Source of the DNA: Reticulomyxa filosa
Lineage: Eukaryota > Protista > Foraminifera
DNA length: 40,252 bases
Reading direction: 5' to 3'
Assembly (NCBI GenBank): GCA_000512085.1
Contig: ASPP01010825.1
Coordinates: 1-40,252, forward strand
Shown: in pieces, positions 29-28,144 of the stretch
Layout: each line of letters opens with the position of its first letter
Position numbering within the stretch: the stretch's first letter is position 1
Notes under the pieces: model-generated
Told to the model about the DNA's origin: nothing
Databases searched by the model: none
What the model saw: only the letters and a program-made list of their open reading frames with translations
Position numbers and translations under genes: made by a program

Positions 29-3000
29 GAAATTTTTCAAAGCTTGACTTTGGCACTTGAGCATCACGCATATATTATTCAAAATCGACTGTTCAAATGT
101 GCATTGAAATTGCAACACGTGCTTCCACAATGCCAGCATTTGCTATGGTACAACGCTTTGACGACTTACAATCCGCCCAAACGCATCGAACAGAAGCTAC
201 AAAAGCTGCAAGCTCGCATCACCGCATTTCCAAACACAGAATTCTTGGAGATGGTTGCACTCGAGTTGTTTTTTGAAAACTGCCCGTTCAAATCAGTTTT
301 GGAGGATTTATTTTTGAGGAACCTATTTGCAGACACAAACGCCCCAATCGAAGCCAAACGAAAGCTATTTCTTACACGTAACGTTTTCTTTTGTTTGTCT
401 TTTTTTTAATTAAAAAAAAAAAATATATATATATATAATACATATACATATATATTATGTGAATACAAATCCTGATCTTTGTTTGTGTGATTATGATGTA
501 CGCAAGTGATCGACATGAATGCTGTGCTTTCCAACAATTCGACGGTAAAGATCCGGAATCTTTTGTACAAATACAGAGACAAACTCACAGTGTTTGGGAA
601 AATAACCGACTTCCAATTGGTGGGGCCGATGGTGCGCGAGCTGTTGCGCAAAGTGGAATTCAATCAGCACCAAACGAATATTAGCGATGCCATCATTGAC
701 AGCATTTTAGTCCCGACTATCGAAATTGTTATTCGTCCTCAAGACAGTCTCTTGTTGTTCGAAATGCTTCAGGAATTTCCTTTGCTCATGGCAAAAGTGG
801 CCCTCGGGATTGTCAAAAATCAAATGTTGGCGGTCGATCTCAGGTTTATTCCAATGTTTGTGGAATTCATCAAGGTCGGACTTTTTTTTCTTAAATTGAA
901 ATATGTTCTTCCCAATCAAACACACCCTTTTTTTTTTTTTTTTTTTTTTTGCTACAATAGCCCTCAAAGACGAAGCAGACGAACGAACACGAAGAATGGA
1001 ACAAACTATTAAAGAAAGTTTATGAAGCATGGCTACTGCGCAACGGATTTATGAAGACTATAGAGTGCATTTTAAAATTTGGCTTGGATTGGAATGAATT
1101 TGAAGCAATGTTTAAAGCGCCCTCGGTGTTTCTTTTGAAAGAATCCGTCCCTTCATCGTTCTCACAAAGACTTACCATCATCACGACTGATCAAATACCA
1201 CTGTCCAGTTTCGATTCATCCACTTTTCAAACAAAAGATCTTGTTGTTGTTTTTATTTATTTATTGCTACATGTTTTTTGCGCATGTGCGCACACATTCA
1301 TTGTGTAATGTTCATTGTGTTGTTTTGGTCTCGTTCAGTGAGGAAAGAGGTGGCGAAAATGATAACCGAAAAGTATCCGAGCAAATATTGTCAAACTGGA
1401 ACTGGAACGCTCAAGAAAGATGACAAAGAAAGTGTAATTCCGTTCATTCGAAAATTTATTAAAAGTAATGGCGAATGGGAATTGGCTTGGGAGTTGGTGG
1501 ATCGATTATTTAGCGGATTTCAGCCTTTTCAATCTGACGACAAAGCGGAGATGATTGCATACATTACGAATAGCGAGGGACTTTTTATTTTTCAGTTTTG
1601 ACCATACATAAATCAAATCAATAAATAAGTTACTAAGTTAGTATATAACTCGTTTGCTTTTTTTTTTTTTTTTTTTCAAATAATGTTAGATTCATTCATG
1701 AAGTTGTTTCGCAGGAGAAATTGAAAACATTACCATGCTGCGCGATTCTTGAAATGTACTGTGAATGGTTTCGACAACTCAGTAACACTATTCTCGAAAG
1801 AATGATCAGCGTGGCGACAATGGTCAGTCTAGTTACGCACGAACGCTATGATAGCTTACTCCAGTTGTTCGAGTTGATCAGGTCCACTCACACAAATATT
1901 ACCCAATATGCCAATGTGTCCAACGTGCAATTGTTGTTGCAACAATTCGAAGACATCCAATTCAAGCGACAGGCTCTGCAGCTCTTTTTTGCCAACGTCA
2001 GTATCGCAGAAAATCATTTCGGACAAGATCTAGCTCCGTTGCAGAAATTGTACAACGAGGTGAAGGACGTCTCGTATTGGAATGAGATCAATTTGTCCAC
2101 GGCATTTTCCAAAGATTGGCAAAATTTCAACTCTGCCAAATTGGCACTGAAGCAATTTGCGAAAATGGCATCATCAGACATCTGGGTGTCGATATGGAGA
2201 TCATTGGTTACGCAACAACAGCAGCTATGGAATATGGTAAGACTACGAACACATAAATGTATATATTTGTATATATTTGTATATGTGCATATGCATTCAA
2301 TATTCATTCCTATTCATGTTTATGTTTTTGTCGCGACAAACAGAGAACCTTTTCCGTGATGAGAACCTTCGACCTATGCCAATGGATTCGAGAAAAAAAA
2401 GAACAGCTGCTGGAAAAGATTGGAACGTATGACTTTGAAGGCTATGTTCAAAGATTTATTGCCAAGGAAATCAACGGCTCAACTATCGGATCGCTCGAAG
2501 CTCGAGAAGAAGCCAAGCTCATAAATCTGCTATTTTCACAAGGAAAGGTAACGGAAGAAGATCGGATCATCAGCCGTCGGCTGTGTGGTATGATTGTTGA
2601 AACAGTTAATTTTGAAACGCATTACAAAGGGATTGCTTTATATATTCCATTATATGTACATATAAATATATATGTATATATGCATATATGTATATGTGTA
2701 AATAACTACATGTGATACACGTGTGACGCTAAAAAAAAAAAAAAAAAGAGAGAACAATGCGAAAAAATGAGGACATTGCCTCAAACAGATAAACGCTTTT
2801 GTTTGTCTACGGTTATTGAGTTTCAAAACAAAGCCAAAGAAGAATGGCAAATTGCAAAAAAAGAATTGGAAGGGAAGACTATCAAAGGTGCGAAGATATT
2901 GAAACAATTTGCCTTACTGAAAAGTAAGCCAAAGACGGACATTGGAACACAAGTGCGTCTGATGTATGAGCCACTCACGAGTAACGGGGAAAGGTTGACA

Positions 3001-6000
3001 TTGGACGATCATGAGAACGAAGAGTTGGACAGTTTGGAAGTGGCCGTTCCCATTGACTTTATGCCCACCGCACGGGAAATGAATGCGTATAAAGCAATCG
3101 AGGCCGAGTTCAAGTTCCACGTCCCGATTGTACATACTACATACAAGCCATTGGAGGGCGCGGAATTGATAAAAAACGCCAAGTCCGAGTTGAAGCGTAT
3201 CGGTGAAGAGCAGAAGAGCGATTCGATTGCAGCCAAGAGAATCAATTGGGAGAGTATTACAAAAGCGTGCGGTCTTTCGAAAGGATATGTAGAGTGGGTC
3301 AAGTTTATCTCTTTCAAATGCCTTTTGCGCAACCCAGCGGACTATCTCGCAAGATTCGAGCTGTACGCAGACCTTGCCACGGCTTTGCGATCTGTCTTTG
3401 ACTACTTTGAAGTGATTGAGCCATTGAAGCTGCTTCGAGACGTAACCGCGTCATTTAGCGCACTGCATCGCAAAAACGAAGAGAGCGACAACAAAACATG
3501 GAATGACGAGCAGTGGATAAAGAGTCTCAGTGCACTGCCATCATTTGATAGCGTGTCCATTGATAAGATTGTCGAGTTTTGGGAACAAAACAGACCGCAA
3601 TTGCCAAGGATTGGGACTGCCGCGATGAAATGGTTTCGATTGCTTGCAAATAGCAATGGGGTTATCAAAGACTGCTTCGAACGCTTTGCAAACTCGCAAA
3701 CCTTTAATGAACACATCCAATCATTCACAGACGACCCCATCCAAGGTGAACGAAGTGCCAGCTTAATGTATGTGCGCAATTTCATTGTAAATACGCTCAC
3801 CACAAAGTACGTCAACATTTCGCAAATGCAAGAATATTTGCTAAACTTTGCCCAGCAAATGAATGAAGAAAGACTCCGATGGTTCACCATCGTTTTTACT
3901 TCATGGGACGTCATCATCAAAGACACGGTGGATGCTCAAGGGTGGTTGTATCAGAATGACAAAGAATTGCTTGACAGAATACGAATAGTTTTGTTGTATC
4001 TTTTCTTTCTATATGTCCTCTTTCAAACTCACAGGTTTTTTTAAACTTTGAAAAAAAAAAAAAAGGTACGCTTTGCAAATGAAAGCTCCACTCAACGCAC
4101 TCATTATGTGATGGTGGGCAGTCTGAAAATCTATCAAGAAGAAAAGGAAGAAATCGAAGAATTCAGACGCAATACTGTCGATGAACAGCTGACCCTTGGA
4201 CCGCAGGACAAGTTTGATCAATTGGCAGATCGTCTGTTGCTACACGTCTCCGCAGAGTCAGAAGCAATCGAAGTAGACACGTTGACCGTGCAACAGAGCA
4301 TATCCTACATGACCGTGGAAGAAGTAAACCAATTGTTCATGTTGCATGACAAACAACTGATTACCTCCGGCTTGGAGGATATGAGCAAATTGTTGGAAAA
4401 TGTCTCGAAATATGGCATCACTGGCAAAAAGTTGAAAGCTTTGGCAGATGATCCTAACAATGAAGACTGCAAAGATTGGTTGCCCACTGGCGAATCAAAA
4501 GCAAACGTCAAGCAACAAATTATTAAAATTGTACAATTTGAAGTATTGAAAGAAAAGGTTTGTTAAGGAAGGAGATAATTTTATATAAAAAATTTTCATG
4601 TCTCTTTCAAATAGCCTTTTTTTTGAGCTGGAGGATTATTATTTCCTTGTGATGTTTATCATCGTTGTTGGTGAATCTTAACATTATAAAAAAAAAAAAT
4701 AGGTAAAAAGTAACTTTATCCCGAAATTTGACTTGTCAAAAAAAATTGGAGAGAAAAGATTGCAATATTATCGATTGGGCGGAAGAGAACGTCTGGAAAC
4801 AGATCGAAATATCGAATTTTCCAAATCAACTTACGAGTTTGAACAGATCAACGAAAACTGGAAAAACTATCTTAATGAATGGGAAATCAAAATCAACAGA
4901 TGTCGACGTGATTATCCGTGTTTATTGTTCCTTACTGTGAACGATATGCGGTTCCTGTGTGACCACATTAAAGAATATAAGCAATCGGCAGATAATTCCA
5001 AAAAACAAGGCCTGTTGAACTTGATCACCTCAAAGGTGTCGTTTATCCAAGCAAACGTTACCCTTCAAGAACTCCAGACAAGCCTTGAGGACGAATCAGT
5101 TTGTCCATTCTTTTTTTTATTTCTCTATATTTTATTGACGTGATATGATGATATCTTTTTTTTTTTTTAAAAAAAAGTTATCAAATTGGAAGTCCGAAAA
5201 TGAATTAGAACGATTGGGTCAATTTCTAAGTATCTTTTTGGTCGCTTTTCGTCCAACGTCCACAAAGGAGTCATCAGCGAAGAAAAATGTGTTGAACATG
5301 GCCGCCCTCATCTTTATTTATGTAAAAACACTCAAGTGTTTTCGTATATAGTAAAACTGAATTTGAGAGAAGGTGAAACACCCACTGCCAGTCGAGTTGA
5401 GTAGATAGTTATTGTTTGTGAATATTAATAATGTCATTGTTGTGCATTTGTTTGAATGTTGGAAAAAGGTATTATTTTGTGAGCAAACCACAACAATCGA
5501 ACAACTGGAATGCTTTTTATTTCGCGCCACTCCGAGCGGATTTGCAGCATCGCTGCATTGTCTCGTGCAACCCGAGTTGCTAAGTGTCCCCGTCCAGCAA
5601 GTATTGATTGTCAAGCTATTGAAATGCATGACTCACCCCAATGGTCTACTTGCGGTTATCACAACAAATATACAATCCATTGTGTCGCAATATTTGATTG
5701 AATATCGAGGTACAGACATCCCCTTGTTGACACGCGAAGAAAAGCTGCAGTTCTACGGCGGGATATTCTGCGGAACCTTTGATGAATACAAAAAACATAA
5801 GAAAAAAGTGCCGTTTGTACAAGTGTATATTTCAAAGCATGAATGTGTTGGGAAATCGTATCTGATTAGTGGGCTTGCGAATCAATTGAGATTACCACAT
5901 CACTTTGTTCATATCCCATTCAATTCATCGGTTGTCGATAGAGATTTTGTGGTGGATAAGTTTGTTCGTTCTCAATCGACAAACACTTTGACGGTACATT

Positions 6001-9000
6001 CTTTTCATCCCTTCATTAATTTGATTTTTTTTTTTTTATTTAATATACTATTAATGTTATCACTTAAACAAAAAAAAAAAAAAAAAAAGATGTTCCATAT
6101 CAACATATCAAGTCAAGCCGGACCAGATGTAAACACTCTGCTGTTCCAATTGTTGGTGCTTCGCCATTTAACGGCGTCCAATGGTGAAAGTTTTTTTGTT
6201 CGAAGCAATCACGCGTTTATAGTGGAGCTGCCGACGGAACTGTGCAATACCCTTCAAAAAACTTATTTGGAAGACGTCAAGCAATGCTTCCATTTCTTGG
6301 GAGATTTGATCGACGAAAAGGCGATTTCTTTTGTTGAAGTGGTAGACGAAATGCGTTCGGAGAAAGTGTCTGATATCTCTTATGTTCAAGTAAATCAGCT
6401 ACAACTCAATGAAAAAGAAATGTTCGTTATACGTTACTTGGATGCATTAGACAAGGGATTCCTCAAAAACACAAGTGAAAAACAAGAACCCTGGAAATAC
6501 GAGACACATGCGGAATTAAAGGACGAACAAATCCGCGTCTTAACCAAGAAGTACTATCCTCGAGGTTTGTTTTTTTCTATACCATCAGAAAAGAGCAAGA
6601 GAAAGAACAAGGGAAGGGACAGCAAAACAAAACGGTTTAGTAATGTATATTGTATACATATGCATGTATTTGTTTTTTTTTTTTTAAAAAAAAGGGACCC
6701 ATTCAATGATTCAGTTGAAGTCGTTCCTACGATTTCTATATTGTCAATTGACACAAGTGTATCACTTCCCATACTTCCAACCTGACAATGCCCCGAAAAT
6801 AAAGAAAAACAAAAGCATCCCATTGCATCATATGGTTGTATCTTCGCTGGTGCAATCTGCGCAATTGATAGCATGCGAAATTCCTGCTTCTGATATAGAT
6901 TCGAAAACAAACGAGGAGGACGAAAAAGGTACTTCGGTGACAGAAGAGGCAGAAGGGACAGAAGAGTTTTTTTTGGTGAAAGAGTGGAAAAAAGAAGATT
7001 CACTCATGGTCGTATTGAATCAGATCCCGATTTCAAATTCAGTGCGCTTGCATTTTTTTTTTTGGTTTAAATATATATTTTGTTTTCGTGTTTGAGAAAT
7101 ATAAAAAAAAAATGTTTCTGTGAAATTAGAAATACCTTCGTATGAATGGAACGACATTGAAACAAGATTTGGACGAGGCAATGCAAATGGCAGAGAATTC
7201 GTTGTCCCTATTGACAATGAATTTGGAAAGAAATAGGCACTCTGATGCTGAGAACTGGAAATGGCTAGTAAGAGAACTCCACTGGAATGTGATCAACTTT
7301 GAAGAGGACATTACAAAAAAAAAAAGGATCAGAAATCAGATGTGATTGACAAGAGTGGTCAGAAGGAGAAAATGCGTTTGATTTTGCAGATTTGTGGGGC
7401 ATTTGAGTTGATAGCATTTTCTGTTTATTATTTTGCTTTGATTTTTTTTCATTTAATTTTTTTGTCGGTTGTTGTTAAAGCTCGCCTGACGAGGAAAAGC
7501 GAGATATTCAAGTAGAAAAGCTGCTGAGCGAAAACAGCGACTACACCTTGACATATGACAATATTTTAAAAATTGTCGCTATATTCTTTCGTGTTAAAGC
7601 TGCCATTCCAGTTTTAATTATGGGAGAAACAGTTATCATACTTCAAATGAAAATGTTCTTTTTTGTTCTCGTTTTGTTCCTCAGTTATTTTTTTGTTCTC
7701 GTTTGGTTCCAAAAAAAAAAATAAAGGGATGTGGAAAAACGAGGTTGCTAAAATTCATGGCAAGCGTGTTGGGAATAAACATGACACCGATTGATGTTCA
7801 CGGAGGATATAGAACAGAGCAATTGGAAAAAGATTTGAGGACACCACGTGAAAGCGCCGAAAGCAATCCAAATAAAATCCATTTGGTGTTTTTGGATGAG
7901 ATAAACACTAGTCCTGACATTGGTGCATTTAAGGAGGTCGTTTGTGATCACAGTTTCAAAGGAAAAGCGTTTCCAGAAAATATGGTCATCGTCGCTGCAT
8001 TGAATCCGTACAGAAAGCATAAAAAAACAAGAGAGGAAATAGAAGCAGAAAAAGAAGAAAGTCGAAATACAAATCGACATTTCCTGGATAATCTTGATAA
8101 AGAAATGAGTGAGTTGGTCTATCGAGTCTTTCCGCTCCCAAGATCGATGAAAACATACGTGTGGAATTTCGGATCGTTGTCTGATCTGGATGAAATGCAG
8201 TACATATCATTAATTACTGAGCACATTTGGTATGTTGTTTTTTTTTTTTTTTAGGGGAGAAAAAAGTTTTTTAATTTTAATTAAAAAACAAATATTGATA
8301 TAATGTGATAAGGTCTAACAAGACAAATATGGACAAGTTGCACTGGTCAGAAAAAAACAAGAATGATCCAGAAGCCAAGGAAAGAATGCTCCAAGGTTTA
8401 GGAAATATCAAACATAAATTTGTAGAATGTGTATTTAATTCACAGTCATTTTTAAGGTATATGTTTGTGTGTGTGTGTAAAATAAAGTGAGATAATGTCC
8501 AAATTTGTTGTGATGTGATATTTCAGAAAAACATTGGGAGACCGCAGTGTATGTTCTCTTCGAGACGTTCAACGCGTAAATAATTTGTTTGTATGGTTTT
8601 ATAATTCTCGATCTGTCAAAAATATTGAACACATGTCCAACGTGATGATTTTGGCATTGGCCCAATGCTACTATTATCGCTTAAATGCCAATGATCGACG
8701 CAAATATGTAGAAATGGCAAAAAAAGAACTTGCTGATGACTTTGAAAATGTCATAGAACGGGAGCAACAGGAATATCTGTATAAGATGGAGATCCCTCAC
8801 GGCATTGCATGCAATCAAATCTTTCGTGAAAATATATTCATATTCTTGTGGCTTTGGCAACAAAGACACCTACGATTGTGGTGGGTAGACCTGGTTCCTC
8901 CAAAACTTTGGCGATGGCGACGGTCCAATCCAATCTGGACTCGTCCAGCAAAAACAAGAAACTGAACGAGGCGCGCTTTGGAGACTTTTTTGTGATCTCT

Positions 9001-12000
9001 TTCCAGTGTTCGAAATTGACCACATCGGAGGCAATTCGAGAGAGATGGGAAAATGCCATAAGATTTGTTGGAAGGCTCAGAGAGTTTGAAATCTCTTTTC
9101 TTTCTTTAGATTGACAAATACTTAAAGAAAACAATATCATGCAAATAGGAATTCGAATGCTAGAGCTCGAAACAGTCATATCACGACATTGGAAAAGAAT
9201 GTCGTGCTCGTGTTGGATGAAATGGGATTGGCCGAGCAATCAAATAACCGACCGTTGAAGGTGTTGCATCAATTGTTGGAAAACGAGAATCGACAAATTG
9301 CATTTATTGGATTAAGGTAACAAAAAAAAAAACAATACATCATAACACAACATACCATAACATAACACATCATAACATAACACGATATAATCATATCAAT
9401 AGCAATTGGAGATTGGATGCCGCGAAAATGAATCGGGTTGTATTGCATCAAGTGTTACAACCAACTAAAAAGGAACTGGAAGACACAGCAAACAAAATTC
9501 TGTGTGGAAATGAAAGTAGTATAGCCTCGGGGAAATTTACCGTCAAAGTGCCACGAATTACAGCCTTTTTTGAGGAAGTGATGAAAACGCAAAATGAATC
9601 TGCGTTTTCCTTTGATTTCTTTGGACAACGTGACTTTTATTCGCTGTTAAGCTATTTAGGCTACTGCGTTGAGATCGGTAGGGAAGCAACCAAAGAAGTA
9701 TTGATCGAAGCCATAATGAGAAATTTCGGTGGAATGAGCCAGAAACAAACCGAATCCTTTTTGTTTCCGAAAATTGTCAAAAACTTGTTGGAAAGTGGTG
9801 AAGAGCTCAACTCTGCCGATGTTTGGAAATCCTGTTCACCTTTGAAATTAATTAACGATAACATTAAGCAAATGCGAAGCGTGGACAAGTCTCCGACATA
9901 TGATATGCGAAATATCATGCTTATCACTGAGTCTCCATTCTTATGGAAGATACTCTTTGACAGCGGCATTATATTGATGGACTCGGCTGAAGTCATTTTC
10001 GGCAGCAGATTTGTGGGAGATGTCGTATCCACGCAATATTTGTACCACGTCATTGAAAAGGTCCGCAATGCAATGAATACAGGCAAGACGTGTGTGCTTC
10101 TGAAGTTAGAGAGACTATATGATTCGCTATACGACGTGCTCAACCAGCGTTATCAAGTGGTGGATGGCCAAAAGTTGAGAAAATTCTTGCAATCGATTTT
10201 GACGTCAATCTTTTTTGATGGCATTTTTTTTATTGTATGTTTGACTTAAAAAAAGATTTTGTCGAATATGTCTTGGAGGAGAAGCAATTCGTTCTCGCAT
10301 TTCCAAAAACTTCCGCTGCATAGTTGTGGCGTCACGTGAAGAAGCCCATCACGCAAATGTTATGGAACATTTTTTGTTTGCTTCTTATCTATGTACATAT
10401 ATATTTATATATGCATATATGTATTAATAAATACATGGAAAAGATATTTGCAAGCATATTTTTCATTGAAATGTGGGCATGGAACTAACACAGACAATAA
10501 GTCCAGACATGCATCTGCCAGTCGCGTTTTTAAGTCGTTTCGAAAAGTTTTACTTGGATCCTGCGACATTGGAGTACTTTTTGGACCCAGAGTTAAAAGA
10601 AAAACAACAAACGTCTCCACACAATTTGGACTCAAGATTTGAAGAAAAATATCAAACGCTTTCACAAGTGGCAAAGAAAAGATTTTCTGATCACCCCAAT
10701 ACCAGTCCCAGTCAATTGTTTATCGGATTTGTCGAAAAGTATACATTCATTAGTTTGGTGGCCAACTTCAAATCGGGAAAAAATAAATCGGAGGAAATGA
10801 AAAATGAAAGTGAAAACAAGAGCGATGTAGAAAACGCCGTCGAAGGATGTTTCCAATTGTTGTTAAAAAATACGGCTTTGGAATTTGTCATTCACGACGC
10901 AAATAAACAAAGAGAGTTTTTACCTTATGCTGACATTGTTAAGTGTCCGATGACATAGCAAAAATAAAGCCATGTGTATTACGATCAACCTTTGTTGTTA
11001 TGCGACTTGCAAAATAGGTGGACGTATTGGAACGAGAAGCCGCAAATGAAAAAAACAACTTTGCATTCGTGAAAATTGTGACGCATGACAATCTGTTATT
11101 GTGCACGAAAAACATTGAAAGAAACGGTTGCGAATATCAACTTACTGTCGAACATGCGTCGACCACTTTTCTCGAAACAAAAAAAATTCAAGACGTTCGA
11201 ATATCTCAAATATCTCAAGTGCAAAATGTTACGATTATCGGAATAAAAGACATTCGCGACTTTACTCACGAAATTGATTTGTTTACTTACGTGACCGAGT
11301 TTTTCCGTATGCGTATAACCCAGGTGGGACATCTCGTGTTGGTACTCGCGTGTGACCCTCCAATGGAAGGGGAAACACTCACCCATTACTTGCATGCGCA
11401 ATACATTGTCGAAAAGGCATATCACAACTATTTGAGAACCAATGAAGTCCTCTTGCAAATTAAGAAAACTGTCGTGATGCTTTTCTACAGGTATTTTTTT
11501 TTTTTCTCTCCCTTTTTGTTTGCATATGTGTATGTATGTGTGTATGTATGTATACGTTAGCCGTCGAGGAGGATCAACATCAAACCAGAGAGATGGTCCA
11601 CAAACACAAATTCCCCCCGAGGTTGGACATCCACTAATTGTGAGTGGAATTTGGAAACATGTATTTGTGGATGCATTGCTACCAGCAGACGTGCCGCAAG
11701 AAATTCAAATCAGTGATGTAAATATATTCGATAAAGAGTCTTGTCAAAGGATTCACAATCGAATTAAGACTGTCATTTTTGATCTTGTCAAAAATTGTAT
11801 TGAATTGGCACTCAACCGCATCCAATTTTCAGAGCCTTCTCAAGACGAAGCGAGCAACATACTGAGAACATATCTACAAAAATCCCCACCCGATAATGGA
11901 AGGTTCCGAGAGATCTTAAACCAACGTATTTTAGATGTATTATCCGATGAAAGACACGGCACAACAAAGTGTCTCCAAGACTTGTTAGAAAAGTCGATCC

Positions 12001-15000
12001 GCAATGTATTATTGGATGAACGTGGATCGCTTCGTAGCCAGTTTTTGACGCTATTACGAGAGAAAATCAAATCGATTTTGGTCGAAGTATTGACAGTTAT
12101 TTTCGACAATCAAAACTTGCATTTATACAATCCTTCAGAACCGAGCGCGGAATCGAGAAACGAGCTCTTTTTGAAAGCGTTGAACGAGCCCAAAATTACT
12201 CGAACGTCACAGCCTTCCCAAGACACTCAAATCCTTATTCGCAACGACATTCCAAATGGAGGACAGTTCCCCTTCAGTAGTTACATTCACTCGTGGATAT
12301 CCTCGTATCAGAAGGAGACATTCAACGAGATTGAAACGAAAACCGAGAACGAGAACAAAGCCAAGTCTCTTCTCAGCTCGGAGGTGTCGCTAACGCAACA
12401 TGTTCTCACCACAATTCAAACCAATGGCTTGAAAGTTCTGGAAGATTTGCCAATCGACTTAATGCGTAAGTACATCCAAGATGTGATACATTTGCAGGCT
12501 CGTGCCCTCGGCCTAAATTCTTATGAGTCGAACATGTACGCTCTTTTGCATAGGCAAGTGTGCTCCTTTGTCGAAAAGGCGTGCGAAAAGCTTGCTGAGG
12601 AATCCAACATTGAGGATCAAGATCATGCGTCACAACAAGACAGCCACTTGGCAGCGCTGATGATGTTCTATCAATTGAATGCTGATCCCACACAAATGCA
12701 TATTGACACGTCCGAGTTGTCCACAGAACAAATCAATGCCGCGTCTTCATTCCAAATCGCAGAAGTGTATTCCATTTTGTGGACTCACGAACCCATCTTC
12801 CAGAATTTCATTAAGATTGTGTTCGTTTTGAAAGAGAGGCCACAGGAAATTGAAAACTTGCAAAATGGTATATTGTATATTATGTGCACATCAATAAAAC
12901 AATATACAACAAACATGTGGATAAAATAATAGCTTGGGAAGAGTCACCAGCTTTGTTTTCCTCGATTCAAAAGATTTTAACTATTATATTGAAGCATGCT
13001 CAAAACAATCTATATTCCAGCTCTGGTGTGGCATTACAAGACCAAATCGAATATTTGGTGTCATTAACAAATCCCTTCGAAGAATTTCTATCATGGCTGG
13101 CCAAATACGACGAGTCCGAGGTAATGAAATTAAAAAAGCAATGGGAGTTATTACTTTTGCAAGTCCTTTGTATTCGCGCTGCAAATTTGAAAGTTGATTC
13201 AAACATTCTGTCAAAGATCAGTGTTCGTTTCGAATACAGAGGTTTTGATGATTTCGACAGTTTGAATGAGGTCCTGGAAAATGTAAGTGCGTTGATTGGC
13301 ACATCCCAATTTAAAAAAGAAAAGGAATCTGCTTTGCAATGGGTTGTCCAAAACTATCTTCGCACTTTTGTATTCAAAGATCGCACCGCGACACTTTCAG
13401 ACGATTTTGTGGAAAATCTTGTTTTGTTGTTGGCTGACGGAAAGTCAAAAAAATTATGCGTTGAGCCAACAATATTCACCAAAATGGAGATTGCAACAAA
13501 TCTTTTGTCATTGCTTCAGAATGTTAAGAAAGAAATATTATACGTATATGTGTATGTCATTTTTTTTTTTTTTCTTCCCCCCCTCCCCACTCTGCAAACG
13601 ATTTTCGATTATTATATGTTGACATTTTGCACAGAACAATCAAAAAAATTTGGGCAATTATCTGCAACAGCATTTAAACGATTGTGACTTAAACAGCGAA
13701 TTTCCAGTACTTATTTTACGCGCACATGAACAATTTTTACATTTCAAAGAGGAAAATAGACAATTAAGTTTGCCCAGCATAGTTACACGTCTCGTTGCTG
13801 CAAATGCAAATTTGAAAAGCAGTTTGGAAGACAAGTTGATGTTGGATCAATTATTGGCAATTGGCGAGTGCAAATTTTGTACCTATCATTTTGCACATTA
13901 TCTGAAAGCCTGCACAGAATTCCCCTCCTATTTCTACGGGCCTGATGGCATTACACATTTCGACATCAAAGAAGGGAGAAAAATAACAAATACATATTTG
14001 GGGGCAAGTGACTGTGCCAAAATTGGTGCTATGTACGTCATTACTCCGAATATGGGAGCACACGAGCAAAAAGTCAGACGTGGCTTGCAATTTTACCTGC
14101 TCACAGAATTTTGGAAGTTTCGTTGGAAAAGAGGAAAGGGAGGAGGGACGTAGGGCCCAATTTTTATTTGTTAATGTTTCACACGTATATTTCAAAAAAT
14201 AAATAAACGAAGATGTAAAGGCTCAGACGCGATCGTGAGCGTGGGAAGAGAGGAATTTGCGAGATTGTTTAAATTTTCAATAAGAGCGCCAAACATTCTA
14301 TCTAGCAATACAATCGTGGATGATGTCTTTCGTGTGTTGGAACATTCTGCTACGTCGTTAAAATCATACGAACAAACCCAATTGATTTTGAAGGACGCCA
14401 AAAAAAATAGAAAAATAGTCTGGAATGAATTCAATCAAAGCCAGTTTGTCCATCTTGTGGCAGGCGTGCTCAATGTGTTTTACAAGGCCAAAAACACAAA
14501 CTTTGAGGTTATGTCACGCTTTATGCCACAAGTACTGCAAACCATACGCAGCACTTGTGGGCAAGAAACAGACAGAGATTACTTGGGCGCTCCTGAGCGT
14601 GTCAATTATTTGTTATGCCAACTCGCAGTTGCCGACTCTGATTTAGTGAATTTCAAGAATCAAAAGCAAGATGTGTTTAAAAAATTTTTGAATATACTCA
14701 ACTTAGGATGGCATTTAGTGGGTGTAATCTTGTCCTTGCCTCCGTCGCCTTTGAGCATTCTGTTCCATGCCCCGAAGAAATATCGAAATGGCTATTTGTT
14801 GGGGATGCCTGAGGACCAAAGCGTATGTTTGCTGAAAGCTAGAACTGGACATCAGGCGTGGATGTGTCCTCAAAAGCATTTATTTTTTGCCGCCGACGGG
14901 TCTTCGCAATCACTATGTTCCTTATGTAATTCCGGAAACAGCAACAACAATAATAACAATAACAACAACGTCAAGACAACAAAGTATCAGCCCGTTCCCG

Positions 15001-17762
15001 TTCCTCGCAATTACTATTTAGGCGTGTCGACGAAAATGGTCACATTGTGCGAAAGGTGGTCGGCGGTAGCGAAGTCAAATACGATACGGATATGTTGACA
15101 CCAAGGGGATATGTGATTATTGAAGGCGAAGACGACATTTGCAGAGATTTTGACGAAACGTCGGTTCGCATAGCGAGATTGTTTGTCAATTTGCTTCTGT
15201 TAATTCATCATAGCTGTATGCAACGCAGTCAAGTCGTCGAATTTACAAAACTGAGTAGTGACGCTAAAAACATAACAAACCGACTATTGAAATTAATAAC
15301 AACGTATATCGAAAAGATTGCTCACGCAGTCGATCATCTGTCCGAGGAAAGCTGTGTATTATTGCTTCATCGTATTATCCAACAGATTTATGAGACATAT
15401 GTTGATGAATTCCCAAATGGCTTAGAGGATTTGTCAATTCGCGGCAGACAAGAGTTTGAAGTCTATTTAATTTCCAAATGCATTGACCCGGTCCTGTTGA
15501 ATCACGGAAAATATATCCGCGAAACTCGCGAATGGACTTTAACAGATCCGAATTGCGTGTATTGGACAACACGTATCGACGATCGATTGTCATTGGAAAA
15601 AGATGAAGGCAAAGAGTTTTTGTCGCAATATTATCCTCATATTTATTTGCCATTCCAAGAAGTCACGTTGCTGCAATTTCGTAGTTACGTGATGCAAGAC
15701 AAAAATAACAACACTGCGTATCCAGTAATTAGCGGACTTTTGAAGACCATGGCATTGTCAAGCGGCTATTCTGTGTTCGCCTTGCGATATTTGCCGGAGA
15801 TGATCAACTGGATGAAACTGGTTCATTATCGATTCAATGGTCGGTTGACAAGAGAAGAAGCCGGGTCGAAAACAGCACAAGATGTTTTGAATAGATGTAT
15901 CGAAGATAAATGGGGAGATATTAATCAATGGATCACTGCTTTGAAAGGGTTCTCCACCGGATGGAATCATGTGGTCAGCCGTACTGCCGATTCCAAAAAG
16001 CAAGGTGCCGCAATTGATGAAAAACGACCTTCGGCCATTTTGGATAACTTCTCTTTGCCTTTTAATAAATCTCATCCTATTGCCGCAAAATCTGAAGAAA
16101 AAAAAGAAAAACATAGCGTGGAAGCCAACTACTCTGGTCCAAGAAAGCGAAGTCTTTTCGATTTTTTCAAAAAAGATGAAACAAACACATCCACTGAGGA
16201 TGAAAAAGGAGGCAACGAAGATAATCTCGAAGATATGTTGGACGTAACAGCGTCTGAAAATGATGTTGACGATCTTGGGTGGATGAAACGCTTTTTAGTC
16301 CTTTCCAACCAGCCATTCCAACTCCTCAAAACTGATGCAAATAACGTTGTCTCTCCACAAGATGTTCCTCTGTCTTTGGCTCTGGAATGTGGTCCAAATA
16401 GTCCTTTGGAAACAAGTAAAATGCTGCGACTTTTGCTAGATCATTTGGTAACAGTCAATAATTCCTTATTAGAGAATTGCTCCAAGTTTCTTTTTTTTTT
16501 TTTTTTTTTTGGTTAAAAAAAGTAATAATTATACACTATTGAAAATGCTTACTTTTGTTATCACAAAAAAGGTCACAACATGTCGAAAAAACTGCTGTAA
16601 CTCGCATCTCGAATGAAAAAGACGTAGTTGGAATTAATGAAGAAGAATTATCGAAGTTGAGCCGCTTTTCAATTTGTACATTTGTTTACCTTTGATTTGT
16701 TGTTGCGGAGGAAAATATTAAAAATCTTTGTTTTGTTTTGCAACAGGATGATCCAACAGTGCGCTAGTCAAAAGTCAAAATATGGACAAGCGGTATCGTT
16801 GAATATCAACTTAGAATTGCTGGAAACACAAATAAAAGAAAAGTACATCGTCGGTCGAAAATATCTATCTTTTGATTTGAGTGAAATCACGTTTGAACTC
16901 TCTGGCGAATATGATATGCAAGAGGTATTTGACCTGATTAATCAAAAGTTTTCGGAAACAGCAAATCAACCAAATTATTTTGAGAAAGTGGACGATAATG
17001 TGTTGTTAACCTTGAACACAAAACTCTTGCATCCAGATTCTTCTATCGCGTCTTATGCTCTTAGGGACAATGTCAACCCATCCGACTACGCCAATCTGGG
17101 TACAAATTCAAACAAATTAAAAGTTTACAAAACACCTAAAGAAGCTGTTGAACAAGTGTTGCTCGCTATTCGACGACAAAAGACCGTTCCAACGGGAACA
17201 GACTCAATTGGTTTATACATGAAAAAGATATTGCATTTGCATCAGAGAGAATATGAACCATTTGAAAAAACTAATGAATTGTGTTTGAAACACAGCAAGT
17301 CTGTATGGGAATATCTAAATAGGATGTATTTGATGGAAGAAAGTAAATGGTGCCAACTGCCAAAGGGCCTTTTGAAAATATATCAGTTAGGTTTTTATTT
17401 ACTCTTCTTGGTATCTTTTTTACAAATTATATGCGTCTTGCAAATAATTTTTATTCAGAGATCCACCTTCTGACGAAACTGAGCAGTTGCTGGGACGATT
17501 TGTTACTGACAATGAAACAGATGCAATATGGAGCTTGCTGCTATGTTGGAAAAAAATCTTGGAAACAACACTAAGCAGACAGGCTCTTCCAAAACCTAAT
17601 GAAATTCCTTTATCAAAATTCCTACATGGAGAAATAAAAGACGATGATCTCAAAAAATTAGTGCTTGAATTGCCAATACAACTTCAGCTAAATCACGCAG
17701 GTATTGCCTTTCAAAAATGTGCATCCAAGTTTGAAAAAAAGATTCAAGCTAGCTTCCTGTGA
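29..17762 (+). CDS. Giant RNF213/mysterin-like AAA+ ATPase with E3-like module (5'-partial, multi-exon, about 5,020 aa in window)
   Basis: RNF213-like motifs in order: GRPHLYLC...VLFC, SKHECVGKS, FHINIS, YTLTYDNILKI...IPVLIMGET|GCGKT (Walker A), VFLDEIN (Walker B), AALNPYR, LVYRVFPLP, SLRDVQR, VVGRPGSSKT (Walker A), VLVLDEMGLAE, GLSNWRLDAAKMNR, FFGQRDFYSL, RNFGG, IFGSRF, LYDSLYDVLNQRY, RFEK, WKHVFVDAL, FPFS, MPED. Hand-called introns: 378-506, 875-960, 1243-1349?, 1595-1689?, 2237-2343, 2656-2748?, 3988-4065, 4558-4702, 5099-5177, 5396-5468, 5994-6089, 6565-6694, 7042-7129, 7407-7480, 7632-7726, 8230-8312, 8457-8526, 9084-9148, 9317-9402, 10174-10255, 10359-10493, 10938-11017, 11491-11560, 12868-12932, 13523-13634, 14122-14220, 16486-16571, 16656-16746, 17386-17458. 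Four 1-nt frameshifts (about 5237, 7320, 8846, 14980) need correction. Stop TGA at 17760-17762. Confidence 0.9.
7661..7710. repeat. Intronic 20-bp direct repeat
   Basis: ttttgttctcgttttgttcc (7661-7680) and ttttgttctcgtttggttcc (7691-7710), 1 mismatch, inside the intron that splits the Walker A motif. Confidence 0.85.
9334..9396. repeat. Degenerate pentanucleotide microsatellite (CATAA-like) in an intron
   Basis: aatacatcataacacaacataccataacataacacatcataacataacacgatataatcata shows 5-nt periodicity. Confidence 0.8.
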
Positions 17763-20580: not shown

Positions 20581-21948
20581 ATGAATAATATCGACACTAA
20601 TAACAAAATAAAAGAAAAGTCGATAAAATGTTTAGGACATATGCAAGCAAATTTATGCTGTGATAGTGTGGAATGGTGTCCTTGTGAAACCTTTGAGCAC
20701 CTGTTTGTGATAGGACACTATCAACTCAACCAGTCAACGGACTCCAATGCCCAAACAAAATCGGGAGGGATAAGTTTATACGAGTACAAACCCAAAGTGG
20801 GTTTGGAAGGAGACAGTCCTTCATTGACACACTTCAATTTGCTCCGTTGGTATTCGACGGGAGCTGTATTTGATATGAAATGGCATCCAAAACGAGAGCA
20901 AACAAATCCATTGTTGGCAGTGGCAATGGCAAATGGAGTGATAGAGTTGTATCAACTGTCGAAAAAACAAAGAGACGAGGATGGAAAAGAAAGTAAAGAA
21001 GAAGATGAAAGCAACAAGCAAACAAGAGGAAGCCAAGTTGAACTTACTCGGATCTCGTCTGTGAAAATTCGAACATTGGATGAATCAACTGGCAATGGCA
21101 ATGAAGACGACAGTCCTCCGTCTTGTCTATCATTGGATTGGAATACACACTTGCATGACAAGCAAGCAGAAGTTGATCGATGCAGATTGTTGAGTGCTTT
21201 AAGTGATGGATCTTTGATCGTGTTAGAGTTGAGCAATAACAAATTGACAATCGTGGATCGTTGGAAGTGTCATACCGACCAAGTATGGACGGGGGTGTTC
21301 GATCATGACTACATGAACACTACACACACGGTCGTGTACAGCGCCAGTGACGACGGGAGTATTGTTTTGTCCGACCGTCGAACTCGCAATGATACCACTT
21401 TGCGACTGAAAGGTTGTCACAATGATTTGGGCGTATGTTCATTGAATCAATCACTCATCCATGGACATGTGTTATATTCCGGAGGGTTTGATGAACACTT
21501 GAAAGTATGGGACAAGCGCTATTTCAAGCAACACATTACTGATGTCAATACATCAAATACACATTCCAATGTAAATTCACGGGAATTGAAAAGTTACAAA
21601 ATTGGAGATGGAGTTTGGCGAATTCGGGTCAAACCAATCACTTTCAATGCAACCAAGTTTTCATTACAACTTGATAATGTTAATCCCATTGCTTCGCACG
21701 AGTTGCTATTGATTGCTGGAATGCGCTCTGGATTTCATGTGTTAGATACCGCTCACACACGGGTCACGGACTTCACTCTTGTCTCTACATATGCGCTACA
21801 TGGACAATACAATGATCTTCAGATCGATAAAAACGAAATACTGGCCTATGGATGTGATTGGATGTTCGGAGAGGAGCATGTGGTTGCCTCTTGTTCTTTT
21901 TATGATAAAGAAATACATTGTTGGAAAATTCAAGAACTATTGAAATAA
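20581..21948 (+). CDS. DPH7: Diphthamide biosynthesis WD40 protein (DPH7/WDR85), intronless
   Basis: CDSVEWCP, GHYQL, AVFDMKW, SASDDG, SGGFDE, GDGVWRI, AYGCDW, ASCSFYDK match the DPH7/RRT2 family. Confidence 0.9.
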   Translation: MNNIDTNNKIKEKSIKCLGHMQANLCCDSVEWCPCETFEHLFVIGHYQLNQSTDSNAQTKSGGISLYEYKPKVGLEGDSPSLTHFNLLRWYSTGAVFDMKWHPKREQTNPLLAVAMANGVIELYQLSKKQRDEDGKESKEEDESNKQTRGSQVELTRISSVKIRTLDESTGNGNEDDSPPSCLSLDWNTHLHDKQAEVDRCRLLSALSDGSLIVLELSNNKLTIVDRWKCHTDQVWTGVFDHDYMNTTHTVVYSASDDGSIVLSDRRTRNDTTLRLKGCHNDLGVCSLNQSLIHGHVLYSGGFDEHLKVWDKRYFKQHITDVNTSNTHSNVNSRELKSYKIGDGVWRIRVKPITFNATKFSLQLDNVNPIASHELLLIAGMRSGFHVLDTAHTRVTDFTLVSTYALHGQYNDLQIDKNEILAYGCDWMFGEEHVVASCSFYDKEIHCWKIQELLK

Positions 21949-23829: not shown

Positions 23830-26800
23830 ATGTATGTTTTAGTGTTGTATTGGGCAGTAATTGGCTATGTAATAATAAATGGATGCATTGGTCAGAATGG
23901 ACCATTGCCAACAAGTGAAATGGATGCACTGGTGTCATTTTATAACAGTACAAATGGAGAAGGATGGACAAATAAATGGGATATAATTTGGTCGAATATA
24001 TCACAAAGTGACTTTTGTTCATTTCACGGTGTAGAGTGTGCAAACAATCACGTTGATGAGTTGACAATGCAATTTAATGGTCTGGTAGGGACGCTCCCGG
24101 CAAGCCTGTCCAACTTGACCAAGTTGCGAGTGTTGGAGTTGATAGGAGAGAATCTGTACGGTACTCTTCCATCAGAAATTGGAAGTTTGCGAAACTTGCA
24201 AACATTGGACTTGCAAAATCTAAATGTGACGGGAACAATTCCCGAAGAAATTTTAAGTGGATTGCCAAGCCTAGAATCCCTCGCTATCGTACAATGTCCA
24301 TTTTTGAAAGGGATTTTATCTCAACAAATCAGTTCATTGCAAAACCTGACACGGCTGACTATCTCAGAATGCAATGGAATAAGCGGGACCATTCCTCCGC
24401 AAATTGCCACTTTGGCACTCTTGCATACCCTGCAATTGTCGTCTTGCAATTTTACTGGTTCATTGCCATCCGAATTGGGAGGTCTGCAGAATCTTCAAGT
24501 ACTAGATATTAGTCAAAATCTCTTGACAGGGACAATTCCATCACAATTCAGGTTTATTTTTATTGCAATGCGTGTACGTGCACGTATTTTGTATTTGTAC
24601 GTGCATTTGTGCTTGTACGTACACTCAAACGTAAACACAAATACAAATATTATCAAGCAATCTGTCCAAGTTGTCCCAATTGAGTTTGGGAGAAAACGAA
24701 TTAAGTGGGTCAATTCCAAGTGAATTGGTCAATTTGCGTAATTTGAATATATTGCAATTAAACTCGAATCAATTGAAAGGTACAATCCCAACAAATTTTG
24801 GAACAATGTTGTCTTTGAGTGTATTCGACGTTGGAGGAAATAATCTGACGGGAGTCATTCCATGGAACTTGTGCAAGAGTCTTATTTTGTTTCGTGTGTC
24901 CCAAAATCAGCTGACTGGAACAATCCCATCCGATATTTTTTCTATATGTACGCGGGTGGAGGTGTTTGCATTAGAACACAACCTCTTTTTTGGAACGCTT
25001 CCATGGCAATTGGGAAATTTGACTTTTTTGGAGGTTTTGTCTTTGGGCTATAACCGCTTTTACGGAGCATTGCCAGAGACTATTGGGTGTGTATACAGTC
25101 AAAAAAAAAAAAAATTGGGGATACTTCGCCATAGAGATATAGCTATTCACACATACACACAAACAAACAATAACACTATTACTAGACACTTTGTACAAAT
25201 AAACGTATACTCATTTCCAATTTTGAGATAGTCAGCCAAAGCCGTTGACCACCTGGATTTATCAAACAACGAATTGAGTGGTACGATACCGCCATGTTTT
25301 GGACAAAAGCAAGTCAGTCGTTGGAAAAGCTATATTTGAATAACAACAATTTGAGTGGGACTATCGACGAAGTGACAGAGACATGGAAGAATTTGAGAGA
25401 GTTGGCTATCAGCGACAACCACTTGAGCGGGACATTGCCAACGTTTCGATTGGCCAAGAATTTGAGTGCATTGATTGCATCGGACAATTATTTCACAGGG
25501 TCTTTGCCATCGTTTTACAACAATTCCAATTTGGTTGTTTTGTCATTGGACAATAATCAATTTCAACATAAACTACCAATCCTCGCAAATTCTATGAACA
25601 ATTTGCGCTCATTGACATTGCACAACAATCAATTATCCGACAACGACCTGACCTCATGGTAACTGTTCACAAAAAAAAAAATATGGCTGAAACTATTGTT
25701 TAAACAACAACTTGTAACAATAACATTTGAGAAATATAAAAAAAAAAAAGGTTAGACAAACTCTTTCGAAAGTCTCCTGTGCTATCAATCCTTACATTGG
25801 CAAACAATCATGGACTGGTTGGATCCATTCCAGCGCTAATCTACAATTCAGCATTGTCCGCATTGATTGCTCATGGATGCAGCATCAACGGCCAATTACC
25901 ACAAATCGCATCCAATCAAAAAAGCCATTTACTTTTTGCAAGTTTATCCCAAAATCGATTGTCTGGACTCATGCCGGAGCATTTCATCAATCAAAACGGC
26001 ACTGTCATCAACAATACTCAAATTTACTATCAAACCACTTTTCTCAATTGGGAGGAGCTCCTTGTTACTCAAAGTTTTTAGCTTTTGTCTTTGTTTTTAT
26101 ATTTTAACGAGTACGTTATATATTTATATATGTGTATATATGCGGCCATTTTGTTTGTTTGTACGTTAAAGGTAGAGATGTCCCAAATGCTAGTCATATC
26201 GCCATTGATTGAATACGGCTTGTATTTGTCTGGAAATCGGTTTAAACAAAATGGCGAGTGGTATAAGGGGTTTTCGCAGCAGACATTGCCTCATTATGTG
26301 CCATCGAGTGAACGAAGCGCAGAGAACTTGTACATTACAAACCGCGCATCCTTTCAACAGTACGTGATCATTGCAATTGCGGTACCTATCATGGCAGGAC
26401 TACTGTTGTGGCAAATGATACCCGTCAAGTGTATCATCTGTACGTGTGGGTGTTGCTCTCCACGATTCCCTTTTGCTCGCCAAAAGCCGTCGAACATTGG
26501 GTTTTTCAAACAAATCGAAGTTAATGTGTCTCGTACTCTCTATCTGTCCAAAAAAAAAAAATATATATATATATATGTATATACAATGTGTGCATTCGAA
26601 TAAATAAATAAGTATGTGTATAAGCTAATGAGTAATGGCTACGTCCTTGGAGTAAGTTGTCTATTGGCAGTGATATATTGTATCAACGCCAACTTTTATT
26701 CCGAGGGCTTTCCCTTGTCGCAAATGTCACTGGCGTATGTGAATGATCCACCAAAAAGTACGGTGGGAGTGCTGATAGCAATCGTACTGTGCACAAATGC

Positions 26801-28144
26801 GATTGTCCTTGGCTACGTGTTGAAAATAAGATACCAGGACCAAGTCGAACAAATATTCCAAGCGTATGCCAAAGAGCCTTTAGCCATGCATTCCGACCAG
26901 TCCACTGATGCGACGACGGTAGTGAGTATGGAGCCTTTGGTTTTCGATGGAAAGAAATGGCTGGAGTTGTGTCTATATTTGACACTTTGGATAGTTACAT
27001 TATGTTGTGTCGTGAGCTATTGCGTACTCGAGGCCTTTCCAAGTAATAATACATTAAATATTGATTCCAACGTCATATTTGTTTTGCAGGGATCGTTGTC
27101 ACTGTTACTATGTCTATATAATTCCTTCGTTGCTCCCAATCTCTCCACGCTGCTCATTCAAATGATCATCTATTATCGCCGCCCATCCAAATCTACCAGT
27201 CAATGGCTGCTGACAATGTGTACTCCATTTCTCACTCTATTGTTACGGGGATTGATGTGCATCTATTTGCCCATTGTTGCTGCTACGTATTTTTATGACA
27301 GCTGCGGACGACAATGGGTCAATTACTGGGATCTTTGTGTCACTTCAAAACCAAATGAAGTGGTCGTTGAATATCTCTGGAACGTCAATGTCACGTTGTC
27401 TGGCGAAAATTTCCTTTGGTCTTCGACCTCTTCTGCTAACTTTGCCTTGCCATTAATGTATTGGAGTGACGTGTGTCGTAAAGGCTTTTATCACAATTAT
27501 CAATACGGTATGTACATACGTGGTGTATTATTACATTTAATCTTTTCTTTAAAAAAAAAAAATACCTCTACTTTCATACGATATCTACACGCACATGCAT
27601 GTGCTTGTAGGGGATTGTGCTCGCGAAATAATGGAAAAATGGTGTAACGTGATGATCTTGAAAATGGTGGCAAACGTAATCATGCCATGGATTCATGTAT
27701 TGATATTGAAATGGCGAAATCAAAGACAAGAAAAGGTTTTGCTTACAGACAATGTTGAACATGCCAGCGTTGTGTCCAATTTGGAAATGACAATTTTGCT
27801 TGGATTGTTCTGTCCTCTGATCATACCTTTGTGCATTTTGGCTCTTCTCTCTAACTATTGGAAATATCAGTATCTGTTGAGGACTTGTCACAACTTCACG
27901 CTGTCTGCAAATAATCCCCTTTTTCGTAGCCTTCTTATTCATTGCATATTTTTTGCAACAGTTCATTTGGATGTTCATAGCCACTTTCAACAGTAGTTGG
28001 TTAGGCTATAGTCAACTCTGTTGGAATTGCTTTTTTTTTGGTTTTATCTTCATTGATGTTTGTTTTGTACTTTGTGTCGTCTTTCTTCATCGTGTTGTCA
28101 AACACTGCAAACGCAAGTCTTTGTCTTTTACAACTACTAATTAA
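23830..28144 (+). CDS. LRR-ectodomain, multi-pass transmembrane receptor-like protein
   Basis: Hydrophobic N-terminal signal, LRR N-cap (DALVSFYNSTNGEGW...FCSFHGVEC), about 20 plant-type LxxLxLxxNxLxGxIP repeats, then many hydrophobic segments. Introns 24552-24657, about 25087/25091-25231, 25659-25750, 26064-26171, 26520-26612, 27508-27610. Frameshifts near 25297 and 27916-27924. Confidence 0.85.

What the first reader, a model, noticed from the sequence alone, without database searches (positions are those of the whole stretch)
29..17762. Giant protist RNF213-like protein with intact ATPase motifs but apparently no catalytic E3 site
Seen: both Walker A/B pairs corresponding to the active RNF213 AAA modules are intact (GETGCGKT/VFLDE and GRPGSSKT/VLVLDE). 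No RING-type Cys/His pattern appears in 11561-14800, the RZ finger is degenerate and two SAM-like domains are inserted. About 5,020 codons lie in the window with the N-terminus still missing. Known: animal RNF213 is a pathogen-sensing ATPase/E3 that ubiquitylates bacterial LPS through its RZ finger. Inference: this is a rewired immune-like sensor whose output may be SAM-mediated assembly rather than ubiquitin transfer.
Basis: partly seen in the sequence, partly recalled or inferred. Interest (0 to 1): 0.8.

Follow-up and report, generated by a model that had tools for sequence, protein, structure and literature searches.

The report
Ligase-dead RNF213 copy in a foraminiferan
A single-celled foraminiferan carries a giant relative of the human antibacterial ubiquitin ligase RNF213 that has kept its ATP motor but lost its ubiquitin-transfer site, a loss that happened at least three separate times in foraminifera and suggests non-catalytic partner copies working beside active ones.

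Summary
The window is Reticulomyxa filosa contig ASPP01010825.1. Bases 29-17762 hold 30 exons (~5,007 codons) of an RNF213-like gene whose N-terminus is off the contig. Both Walker A/B pairs are present. The RZ finger keeps its four zinc ligands but lacks the catalytic Cys and His. The decay is local: 25 versus 1 lineage-specific changes in RZ (p=2.5e-6), normal rates elsewhere in the E3 module, no in-frame stops. Two reader inferences fail: the RING is absent from every foraminiferal copy sampled, and both SAM-like domains (SAM fold supported for the first) also occur in RZ-intact paralogues, so they do not replace ligase output. RZ was lost independently in three foraminiferal lineages; one dead copy lies head-to-head with an active one. 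Best reading: a selected pseudo-ligase acting as a non-catalytic coat or sensor partner of active paralogues; that mechanism is inferred, untested. Four one-base frame breaks are probably assembly errors, but no reads were available. The scan already noted dead RZ copies on other R. filosa contigs (s1-490712).

The parts
29..17762 (+). RNF213-like gene, 5'-truncated by the contig start; 30 exons, ~5,007 codons, stop TGA at 17760-17762; NCBI splits it into four models (the last is RFI_14863)
2344..2607 (+). SAM-like domain 1, on a phase 0-0 exon in the arm/stalk region; shared with RZ-intact paralogues
   Evidence: AlphaFold pLDDT 90, pTM 0.80; VIA best Z 8.3, first 47 rows nearly all SAM/PNT domains; paralogues
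4282..4557 (+). SAM-like domain 2, homologous to domain 1; not folded separately; shared with RZ-intact paralogues
   Evidence: HHalign 92%, E 6.5e-7; Atlas lead only
5225..5260 (+). frame break 1 (one base short, region with a T5 run)
5838..5858 (+). P-loop-like motif HECVGKS, probably the degenerate AAA2 site
   Evidence: assignment to AAA2 from my own knowledge of RNF213
7311..7325 (+). frame break 2 (A11 run, one base short)
7623..7741 (+). AAA3 Walker A, GET|GCGKT, across intron 7632-7726
7886..7900 (+). AAA3 Walker B, VFLDE
8832..8848 (+). frame break 3 (one base short), just before Walker A4
8884..8907 (+). AAA4 Walker A, GRPGSSKT
9204..9221 (+). AAA4 Walker B, VLVLDE
11561..12867 (+). 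E3-back region
   Evidence: HHalign to RING-bearing RNF213s 96.9%, E 1.3e-10
13283..13342 (+). inferred RING slot: two helices joined by a short loop inside one continuous exon; no RING
   Evidence: motif comparison of alignments A4 and A8; model secondary structure; position is my inference
14865..15023 (+). pseudo-RZ finger: C-x3-H (14865-14879) and C-x2-C (14916-14927) kept; catalytic Cys position is Gly (GGG, 14898-14900), loop three residues short; nine-Asn insert at 14943-14969; no His in the general-base loop
15019..15023 (+). frame break 4 (one base short); the NCBI model bridges it with a 38-nt 'intron'
15023..16485 (+). E3 core after RZ, conserved at the normal rate
16747..17762 (+). 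C-terminal domain (E2-docking domain in mammals), complete and evolving at the same rate as in an RZ-intact paralogue
   Evidence: PMC12075652 for its role

Best explanation
A selectively maintained pseudo-ligase paralogue in an expanded foraminiferal family of RING-less, RZ-type RNF213 proteins. Shown from sequence: the ATPase motifs, E3 scaffold and CTD are kept and the RZ Cys/His dyad is gone, so it cannot transthiolate ubiquitin by the known mechanism. Inferred: it still binds and hydrolyses ATP and joins RNF213-type coats on a target (engulfed or invading microbe, or a vacuole membrane) through its variable N-terminal tip. It would act there as a non-catalytic sensor or scaffold subunit that recruits or co-assembles with RZ-active paralogues, which do the ubiquitylation. 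The SAM-like domains are a family-wide feature that may help assembly in active and dead copies alike. About 0.8 that the gene is a functional pseudo-ligase; about 0.45 for this partner mechanism.
For: RZ alone is accelerated: 25 vs 1 lineage-specific changes against P0005 with P0167 as outgroup (p=2.5e-6; 18 vs 6, p=0.014 with P0155). E3-back, shell, core and CTD show no acceleration (p>=0.1). No in-frame stop in ~5,000 codons, against roughly 140 expected had the whole gene drifted as long as RZ did (rough estimate). pN 0.19-0.51 with saturated pS against four paralogues. RZ-active paralogues exist in the same genome (P0005; L009). Three independent losses on the tree, each beside an intact relative; 0 of 200 bootstrap trees join them. 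Dead P0006 has 3,510 open codons, pairwise dN/dS 0.18 with P0167, and lies head-to-head with that active copy. Human RZ-dead mutants still coat Toxoplasma vacuoles, coat growth is cooperative and needs both ATPase sites (PMC11549300).
Against: No expression, localisation or biochemical data; no sequencing run was listed. Four frame breaks, if real, make it a pseudogene. Human RZ-dead mutants fail to coat bacteria (PMC11549300). Hetero-assembly of paralogues is not shown for any RNF213, and purified RNF213 did not oligomerise in vitro (PMC12075652). The head-to-head layout is a single case in another species; the window's upstream neighbour is off the contig. Two AAA exons are mildly accelerated (p~0.02-0.03, uncorrected).
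Confidence: 0.45

Rival explanations
1. Decoy or negative regulator: it caps coats of active paralogues, competes for E2~Ub through its CTD, or absorbs microbial antagonists aimed at the active copies.
For: CTD and E3 scaffold kept at normal rates. In the P0006/P0167 pair the catalytic loop differs at 7 of 8 codons and the His loop is deleted, inside a tract of low synonymous divergence (45 of 285 other residues differ; Fisher p=3e-5), as if the dead state were actively kept. A Shigella effector targets human RNF213 (abstract).
Against: No direct data. The same sequence evidence fits the partner model. A pure decoy need not keep both ATPase sites. The catalytic loop also varies among intact copies.
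Confidence: 0.2
2. Stand-alone, ubiquitin-independent ATPase coat or remodeller of membranes or vacuoles, needing no active paralogue.
For: RZ-dead human protein coats vacuoles unaided (PMC11549300). P0016 has deleted the whole finger.
Against: Zinc ligands and CTD are retained in this copy and in P0006; no new effector domain was found in the E3 half.
Confidence: 0.14
3. Recent pseudogene: once a functional pseudo-ligase, now inactivated by real frameshifts.
For: Four frame breaks, the first upstream of the ATPase core. Large gene families shed copies. No reads to check.
Against: All four are one base short, two at or near T5 and A11 runs, with no nonsense codon. One-base breaks at short runs also occur in RZ-intact paralogues L003 and L009, in L005, and in an unrelated LRR gene on this contig, which points to assembly error.
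Confidence: 0.14
4. One reading: the SAM domains replaced ubiquitin transfer as the output.
For: SAM fold supported; SAM domains often polymerise (own knowledge).
Against: Both SAMs occur in RZ-intact L009, P0167 and P0152. They sit in the arm/stalk, with insertions relative to canonical SAMs. No polymer interface was tested.
Confidence: 0.04
5. Still a ligase, through a cryptic site or an E3 domain in the missing N-terminus.
For: Roughly 600-1,000 residues are probably missing by comparison with L009. E3 module swaps exist in the family (IBR domains in the RZ slot of Cymbomonas P0169).
Against: Paralogue N-termini scanned gave fn3 or nothing, no E3 family. The only significant fold match of the modelled E3 half is RNF213 itself.
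Confidence: 0.03

Closest known systems
Mammalian RNF213 (mysterin); PDB 9jwg, 8s24, 6tax, 7oik
   Same: Order of AAA core, E3-back, shell, core, RZ position and CTD; two Walker A/B pairs; E3 module fold (Foldseek E 1e-10; VIA Z 24.8, 637 aligned, rmsd 16.7 A for a model with pTM 0.45); the four RZ zinc ligands.
   Different: No RING; catalytic Cys (human C4516) and His (H4537) absent; two SAM-like domains in the arm; the mammalian E2-contact Trp is not recognisable in any foraminiferal copy; N-terminus unknown.
RZ-intact foraminiferal RNF213-like proteins (R. filosa RFI_30897 and contig ASPP01047817.1; Nonionella stella EukProt P165887 and P272242)
   Same: RING-less architecture, both SAM-like domains where the N-terminal half is available, 30-55% identity, nearest relatives on the tree (100/100).
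   Different: They keep the Cys/His dyad and pass PF20173; this copy does not.
Engineered RZ-dead RNF213 (C4516S, H4509A; PMC11549300)
   Same: ATPase-competent and ligase-dead; still coats Toxoplasma vacuoles.
   Different: Laboratory point mutants; here the state is natural, old and apparently selected.
Pseudoenzyme partners and head-to-head sensor/executor NLR pairs (from memory, analogy only)
   Same: A catalytically dead paralogue kept beside an active one; divergent gene pair in the P0006/P0167 case.
   Different: Unrelated proteins; no functional pairing shown here.

Membership tests
RNF213/mysterin family | Dynein-like AAA+ core homologous to RNF213 | tested here: met
   E 6e-22 to human RNF213; 816 relatives of the AAA4-5 exon
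RNF213/mysterin family | Walker A and B intact in AAA3 and AAA4 | tested here: met
   AAA4 is in frame only if the upstream breaks are errors
RNF213/mysterin family | E3 module scaffold and CTD after the AAA core | tested here: met
RNF213/mysterin family | RING domain (animal-type) | tested here: not met
   also absent from all foraminiferal copies sampled
RZ-type transthiolating E3 | Four zinc ligands C, H, C, C | tested here: met
RZ-type transthiolating E3 | Catalytic Cys and general-base His | tested here: not met
   Gly at the Cys position, no His in the loop; PF20173 12 bits vs cut-off 27
RZ-type transthiolating E3 | E2-docking residues of the CTD | tested here: inconclusive
   CTD complete; Phe where most intact foram copies have Tyr; alignment to animals poor
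RZ-type transthiolating E3 | Ubiquitin transfer or ATPase activity | not testable with these tools
   needs purified protein
SAM domain | SAM helical fold (domain 1) | tested here: met
   pLDDT 90; best Z 8.3, rmsd 2.3-2.4 A, ~70 aligned; top rows are SAM/PNT throughout; Z is modest and Pfam and PDB sequence searches find nothing
SAM domain | SAM fold (domain 2) | tested here: inconclusive
   not folded; homologous to domain 1 at 92%
SAM domain | Head-to-tail polymerisation | not testable with these tools
   needs biochemistry
Expressed, intact gene | Open frame in reads and a full-length transcript | not testable with these tools
   no run listed; no own genome held

The most novel reading that the evidence does not exclude
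Foraminifera run a two-component RNF213 system in which ligase-dead, ATPase-active copies act as diversified sensors and trigger ubiquitylation by a few RZ-active executors, sometimes encoded head-to-head, a sensor/executor design not described for this family in the papers searched.
Probability: 0.25. Interest if true: 0.8.

Novelty: new variant of a known kind. Interest (0 to 1): 0.5.

Why it matters
RNF213's ATP-driven coat formation and its ubiquitin transfer are separable in human mutants, but whether the ligase-independent activity matters in nature is open. Natural copies that lose only the catalytic dyad, repeatedly and under continued selection, indicate that it does. They give ready-made active/dead pairs (this gene with RFI_30897; P0006 with P0167) for testing complementation in trans, dominant-negative action and coat assembly. 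It also shows that RING-less, RZ-based RNF213 is the foraminiferal norm. Limits: the organism is hard to work with, the assembly is error-prone, and the scan has already noted dead copies elsewhere in this genome.

Tried and rejected
The genome search 'own': no genome held. The look-up of sequencing runs: none listed, so read laying could not be used. The word search with the post-RZ exon found one fragment; the big protein search was then used once because the family was left open. Pfam and PDB sequence searches miss both SAMs. The Cys/His cluster near 13870 (CKFC...H..H) was rejected as a zinc finger: it is helical in the model and only one Cys is conserved. An intron or frame error hiding the catalytic Cys was rejected: the frame is continuous between the zinc ligands and matches paralogues. 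The 38-nt intron at ~14985-15021 was rejected in favour of a one-base break: it is shorter than all 29 other introns (65-145 nt) and its translation aligns with paralogues. JGI scans gave no foraminiferal RZ; eight non-foram loci all had the catalytic Cys. Lineage-specific dN/dS failed through saturation. The mixture-model tree timed out; LG+G4 was used and the AU test was not run. Paper searches found nothing on RNF213 in Reticulomyxa or on natural ligase-dead paralogues.
Full report
Source and gene model. The window is the whole 40,252-bp contig ASPP01010825.1 of Reticulomyxa filosa, assembly GCA_000512085.1. NCBI splits 515-17762 into four genes. Reading the junctions gives one gene of 30 exons with 29 GT-AG introns of 65-145 nt and 15,017 coding bases; allowing for four missing bases this is about 5,007 codons with no in-frame stop. 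Base 29 follows an acceptor AG, and the first exon corresponds to a point roughly 900 codons into paralogue L009, so the N-terminus is on another contig.

RNF213 homology. The AAA3 exon matches human RNF213 at E 6e-22. A profile of the foraminiferal E3 half matches it at E 3e-12. The AlphaFold model of that half (mean pLDDT 69, pTM 0.45) has RNF213 entries as its only significant Foldseek hits and aligns to the human E3 module at Z 24.8, next best 6.6. The E3-back aligns to RING-bearing RNF213s at 96.9%. Walker A and B of AAA3 and AAA4 are present at 7623-7741, 7886-7900, 8884-8907 and 9204-9221; these are the two active sites in mammals (PMC12075652).

No RING. No RING pattern occurs in any + frame. 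The inferred slot (about 13283-13342) is a short loop between two helices inside one exon, and no intron is long enough to hide a RING exon. This is the family state: none of the foraminiferal proteins sampled has a RING, and many other RNF213-like proteins lack one. In mammals the RING is dispensable for bacterial ubiquitylation (PMC11549300).

The RZ finger is dead. Human RZ uses C4505, H4509, C4525 and C4528 for zinc and C4516/H4537 as nucleophile and base (PMC11549300). The window keeps all four ligands. The nucleophile position is Gly (GGG), the loop is three residues short, nine Asn codons follow the last Cys, and the loop that carries the His has none. The frame is continuous between the ligands, so an assembly slip cannot explain this. 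Against R. filosa paralogue P0005, RZ shows 25 versus 1 lineage-specific changes (p=2.5e-6; 18 versus 6 with a second outgroup), while E3-back, shell, core and CTD show no excess. Had the whole gene drifted for that long, about 140 stop codons would be expected (rough estimate); there are none. So RZ decayed while the rest stayed under selection.

Repeated loss. At least nine distinct copies were seen in R. filosa. Among eleven foraminiferal-clade sequences covering the RZ region, eight are intact (P0005, L009, P0021, P0107, P0152, P0153, P0155, P0167) and three are dead: this one, P0006 (Cys to Asn, His loop deleted, ligands kept) and P0016 (finger deleted). On an LG+G4 tree of the C-terminal halves each dead copy groups with intact relatives at 100/100 support and three changes are forced (outgroup branches are long, no AU test). 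P0006, P0016, P0152 and P0167 come from one marine metagenome (ERZ23488602); their foraminiferal origin is inferred from the tree. P0006 and P0167 are a divergent, head-to-head pair, 57% identical, pairwise dN/dS 0.18. Around RZ their synonymous divergence falls to pS 0.2-0.6, yet 7 of 8 catalytic-loop codons differ. Outside foraminifera the catalytic Cys is kept in the great majority of proteins retrieved, with a few losses or swaps. Two intact copies come from the Nonionella stella EukProt set, which I take to be a transcriptome, so the family is probably expressed.

SAM-like domains. Segment 2344-2607 folds confidently (pLDDT 90) and its best structural matches are SAM and PNT domains throughout (best Z 8.3). 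Segment 4282-4557 is homologous to it but was not folded. Both occur in every foraminiferal copy with that region available, including RZ-intact L009, P0167 and P0152. They are ancestral features of the foraminiferal family, not a substitute for the ligase.

Frame breaks. Four sites are one base short (about 5240, 7320, 8840, 15022). Similar one-base breaks at short runs occur in RZ-intact L003 and L009, in L005 and in an unrelated LRR gene at about 25295 of this contig. With no nonsense codons this favours assembly error, but two of the four are not in long runs and no reads were available. I put a real recent pseudogene at about 0.14.

Mechanism. Shown: motor motifs, scaffold and CTD kept; catalytic dyad lost; selection continued afterwards. 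Known: RNF213 coats grow cooperatively, need both ATPase sites, and RZ-dead mutants still coat Toxoplasma vacuoles though not bacteria (PMC11549300); the CTD docks the E2 (PMC12075652). Inferred: this copy is a non-catalytic sensor or scaffold that co-assembles with active paralogues (0.45). Rivals are decoy or negative regulator (0.2), stand-alone ATPase coat (0.14), recent pseudogene (0.14), SAM output (0.04) and cryptic ligase (0.03). Sequence alone cannot separate the first three.

Novelty. No paper in the library links RNF213 to Reticulomyxa or describes natural ligase-dead paralogues (subscription papers are not covered). The scan has noted RING-less and RZ-dead copies on other R. filosa contigs; those are unchecked notes, and my own R. 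filosa sample (two intact, one dead) cannot confirm their claim that most copies are dead. Verdict: new variant of a known kind, interest 0.5.

Noticed in passing
L001/L007/L010 (ERZ23488602 scaffold_14): RZ-dead P0006 and RZ-intact P0167 are encoded head-to-head; a tract of low synonymous divergence spans RZ, yet the catalytic loops differ.
   Followed up: partly
P0169 (Cymbomonas tetramitiformis), residues ~5400-5630: IBR/RBR-type domains occupy the RZ slot of an RNF213-like protein: an apparent E3 module swap.
   Followed up: no
window 5225-5260; L005 6020-6060; L009 7750-7770: Three R. filosa paralogues each have a one-base frame break (-1, +1, +1) in the same ~90-nt stretch, while L006 and P0157 do not. 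Probably homopolymer errors, but the coincidence is unexplained.
   Followed up: partly
L009 836-2221; L007 7456-9999: Fibronectin type III domains at the N-terminal tip of two RZ-intact paralogues; the tips of other paralogues differ.
   Followed up: partly
L004 15710-16210; L010 18096-18320: Small canonical SAM-domain ORFs lie just downstream of two foraminiferal RNF213-like genes (P0016, P0167).
   Followed up: no
window 23830-27996: LRR gene with plant-receptor-like repeats and a one-base frame break at a T run near 25295.
   Followed up: partly
window 29205-30858: eIF2B-alpha-like (IF-2B family) gene with an unrelated Cys-containing N-terminal part.
   Followed up: partly
window 20581-21948: WD40 beta-propeller-like ORF (weak Pfam hits).
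   Followed up: no
P0052 (Potamilus), P0065 (Capsaspora), P0159: Full-length RNF213-like proteins outside foraminifera that also appear to lack a catalytic RZ.
   Followed up: no
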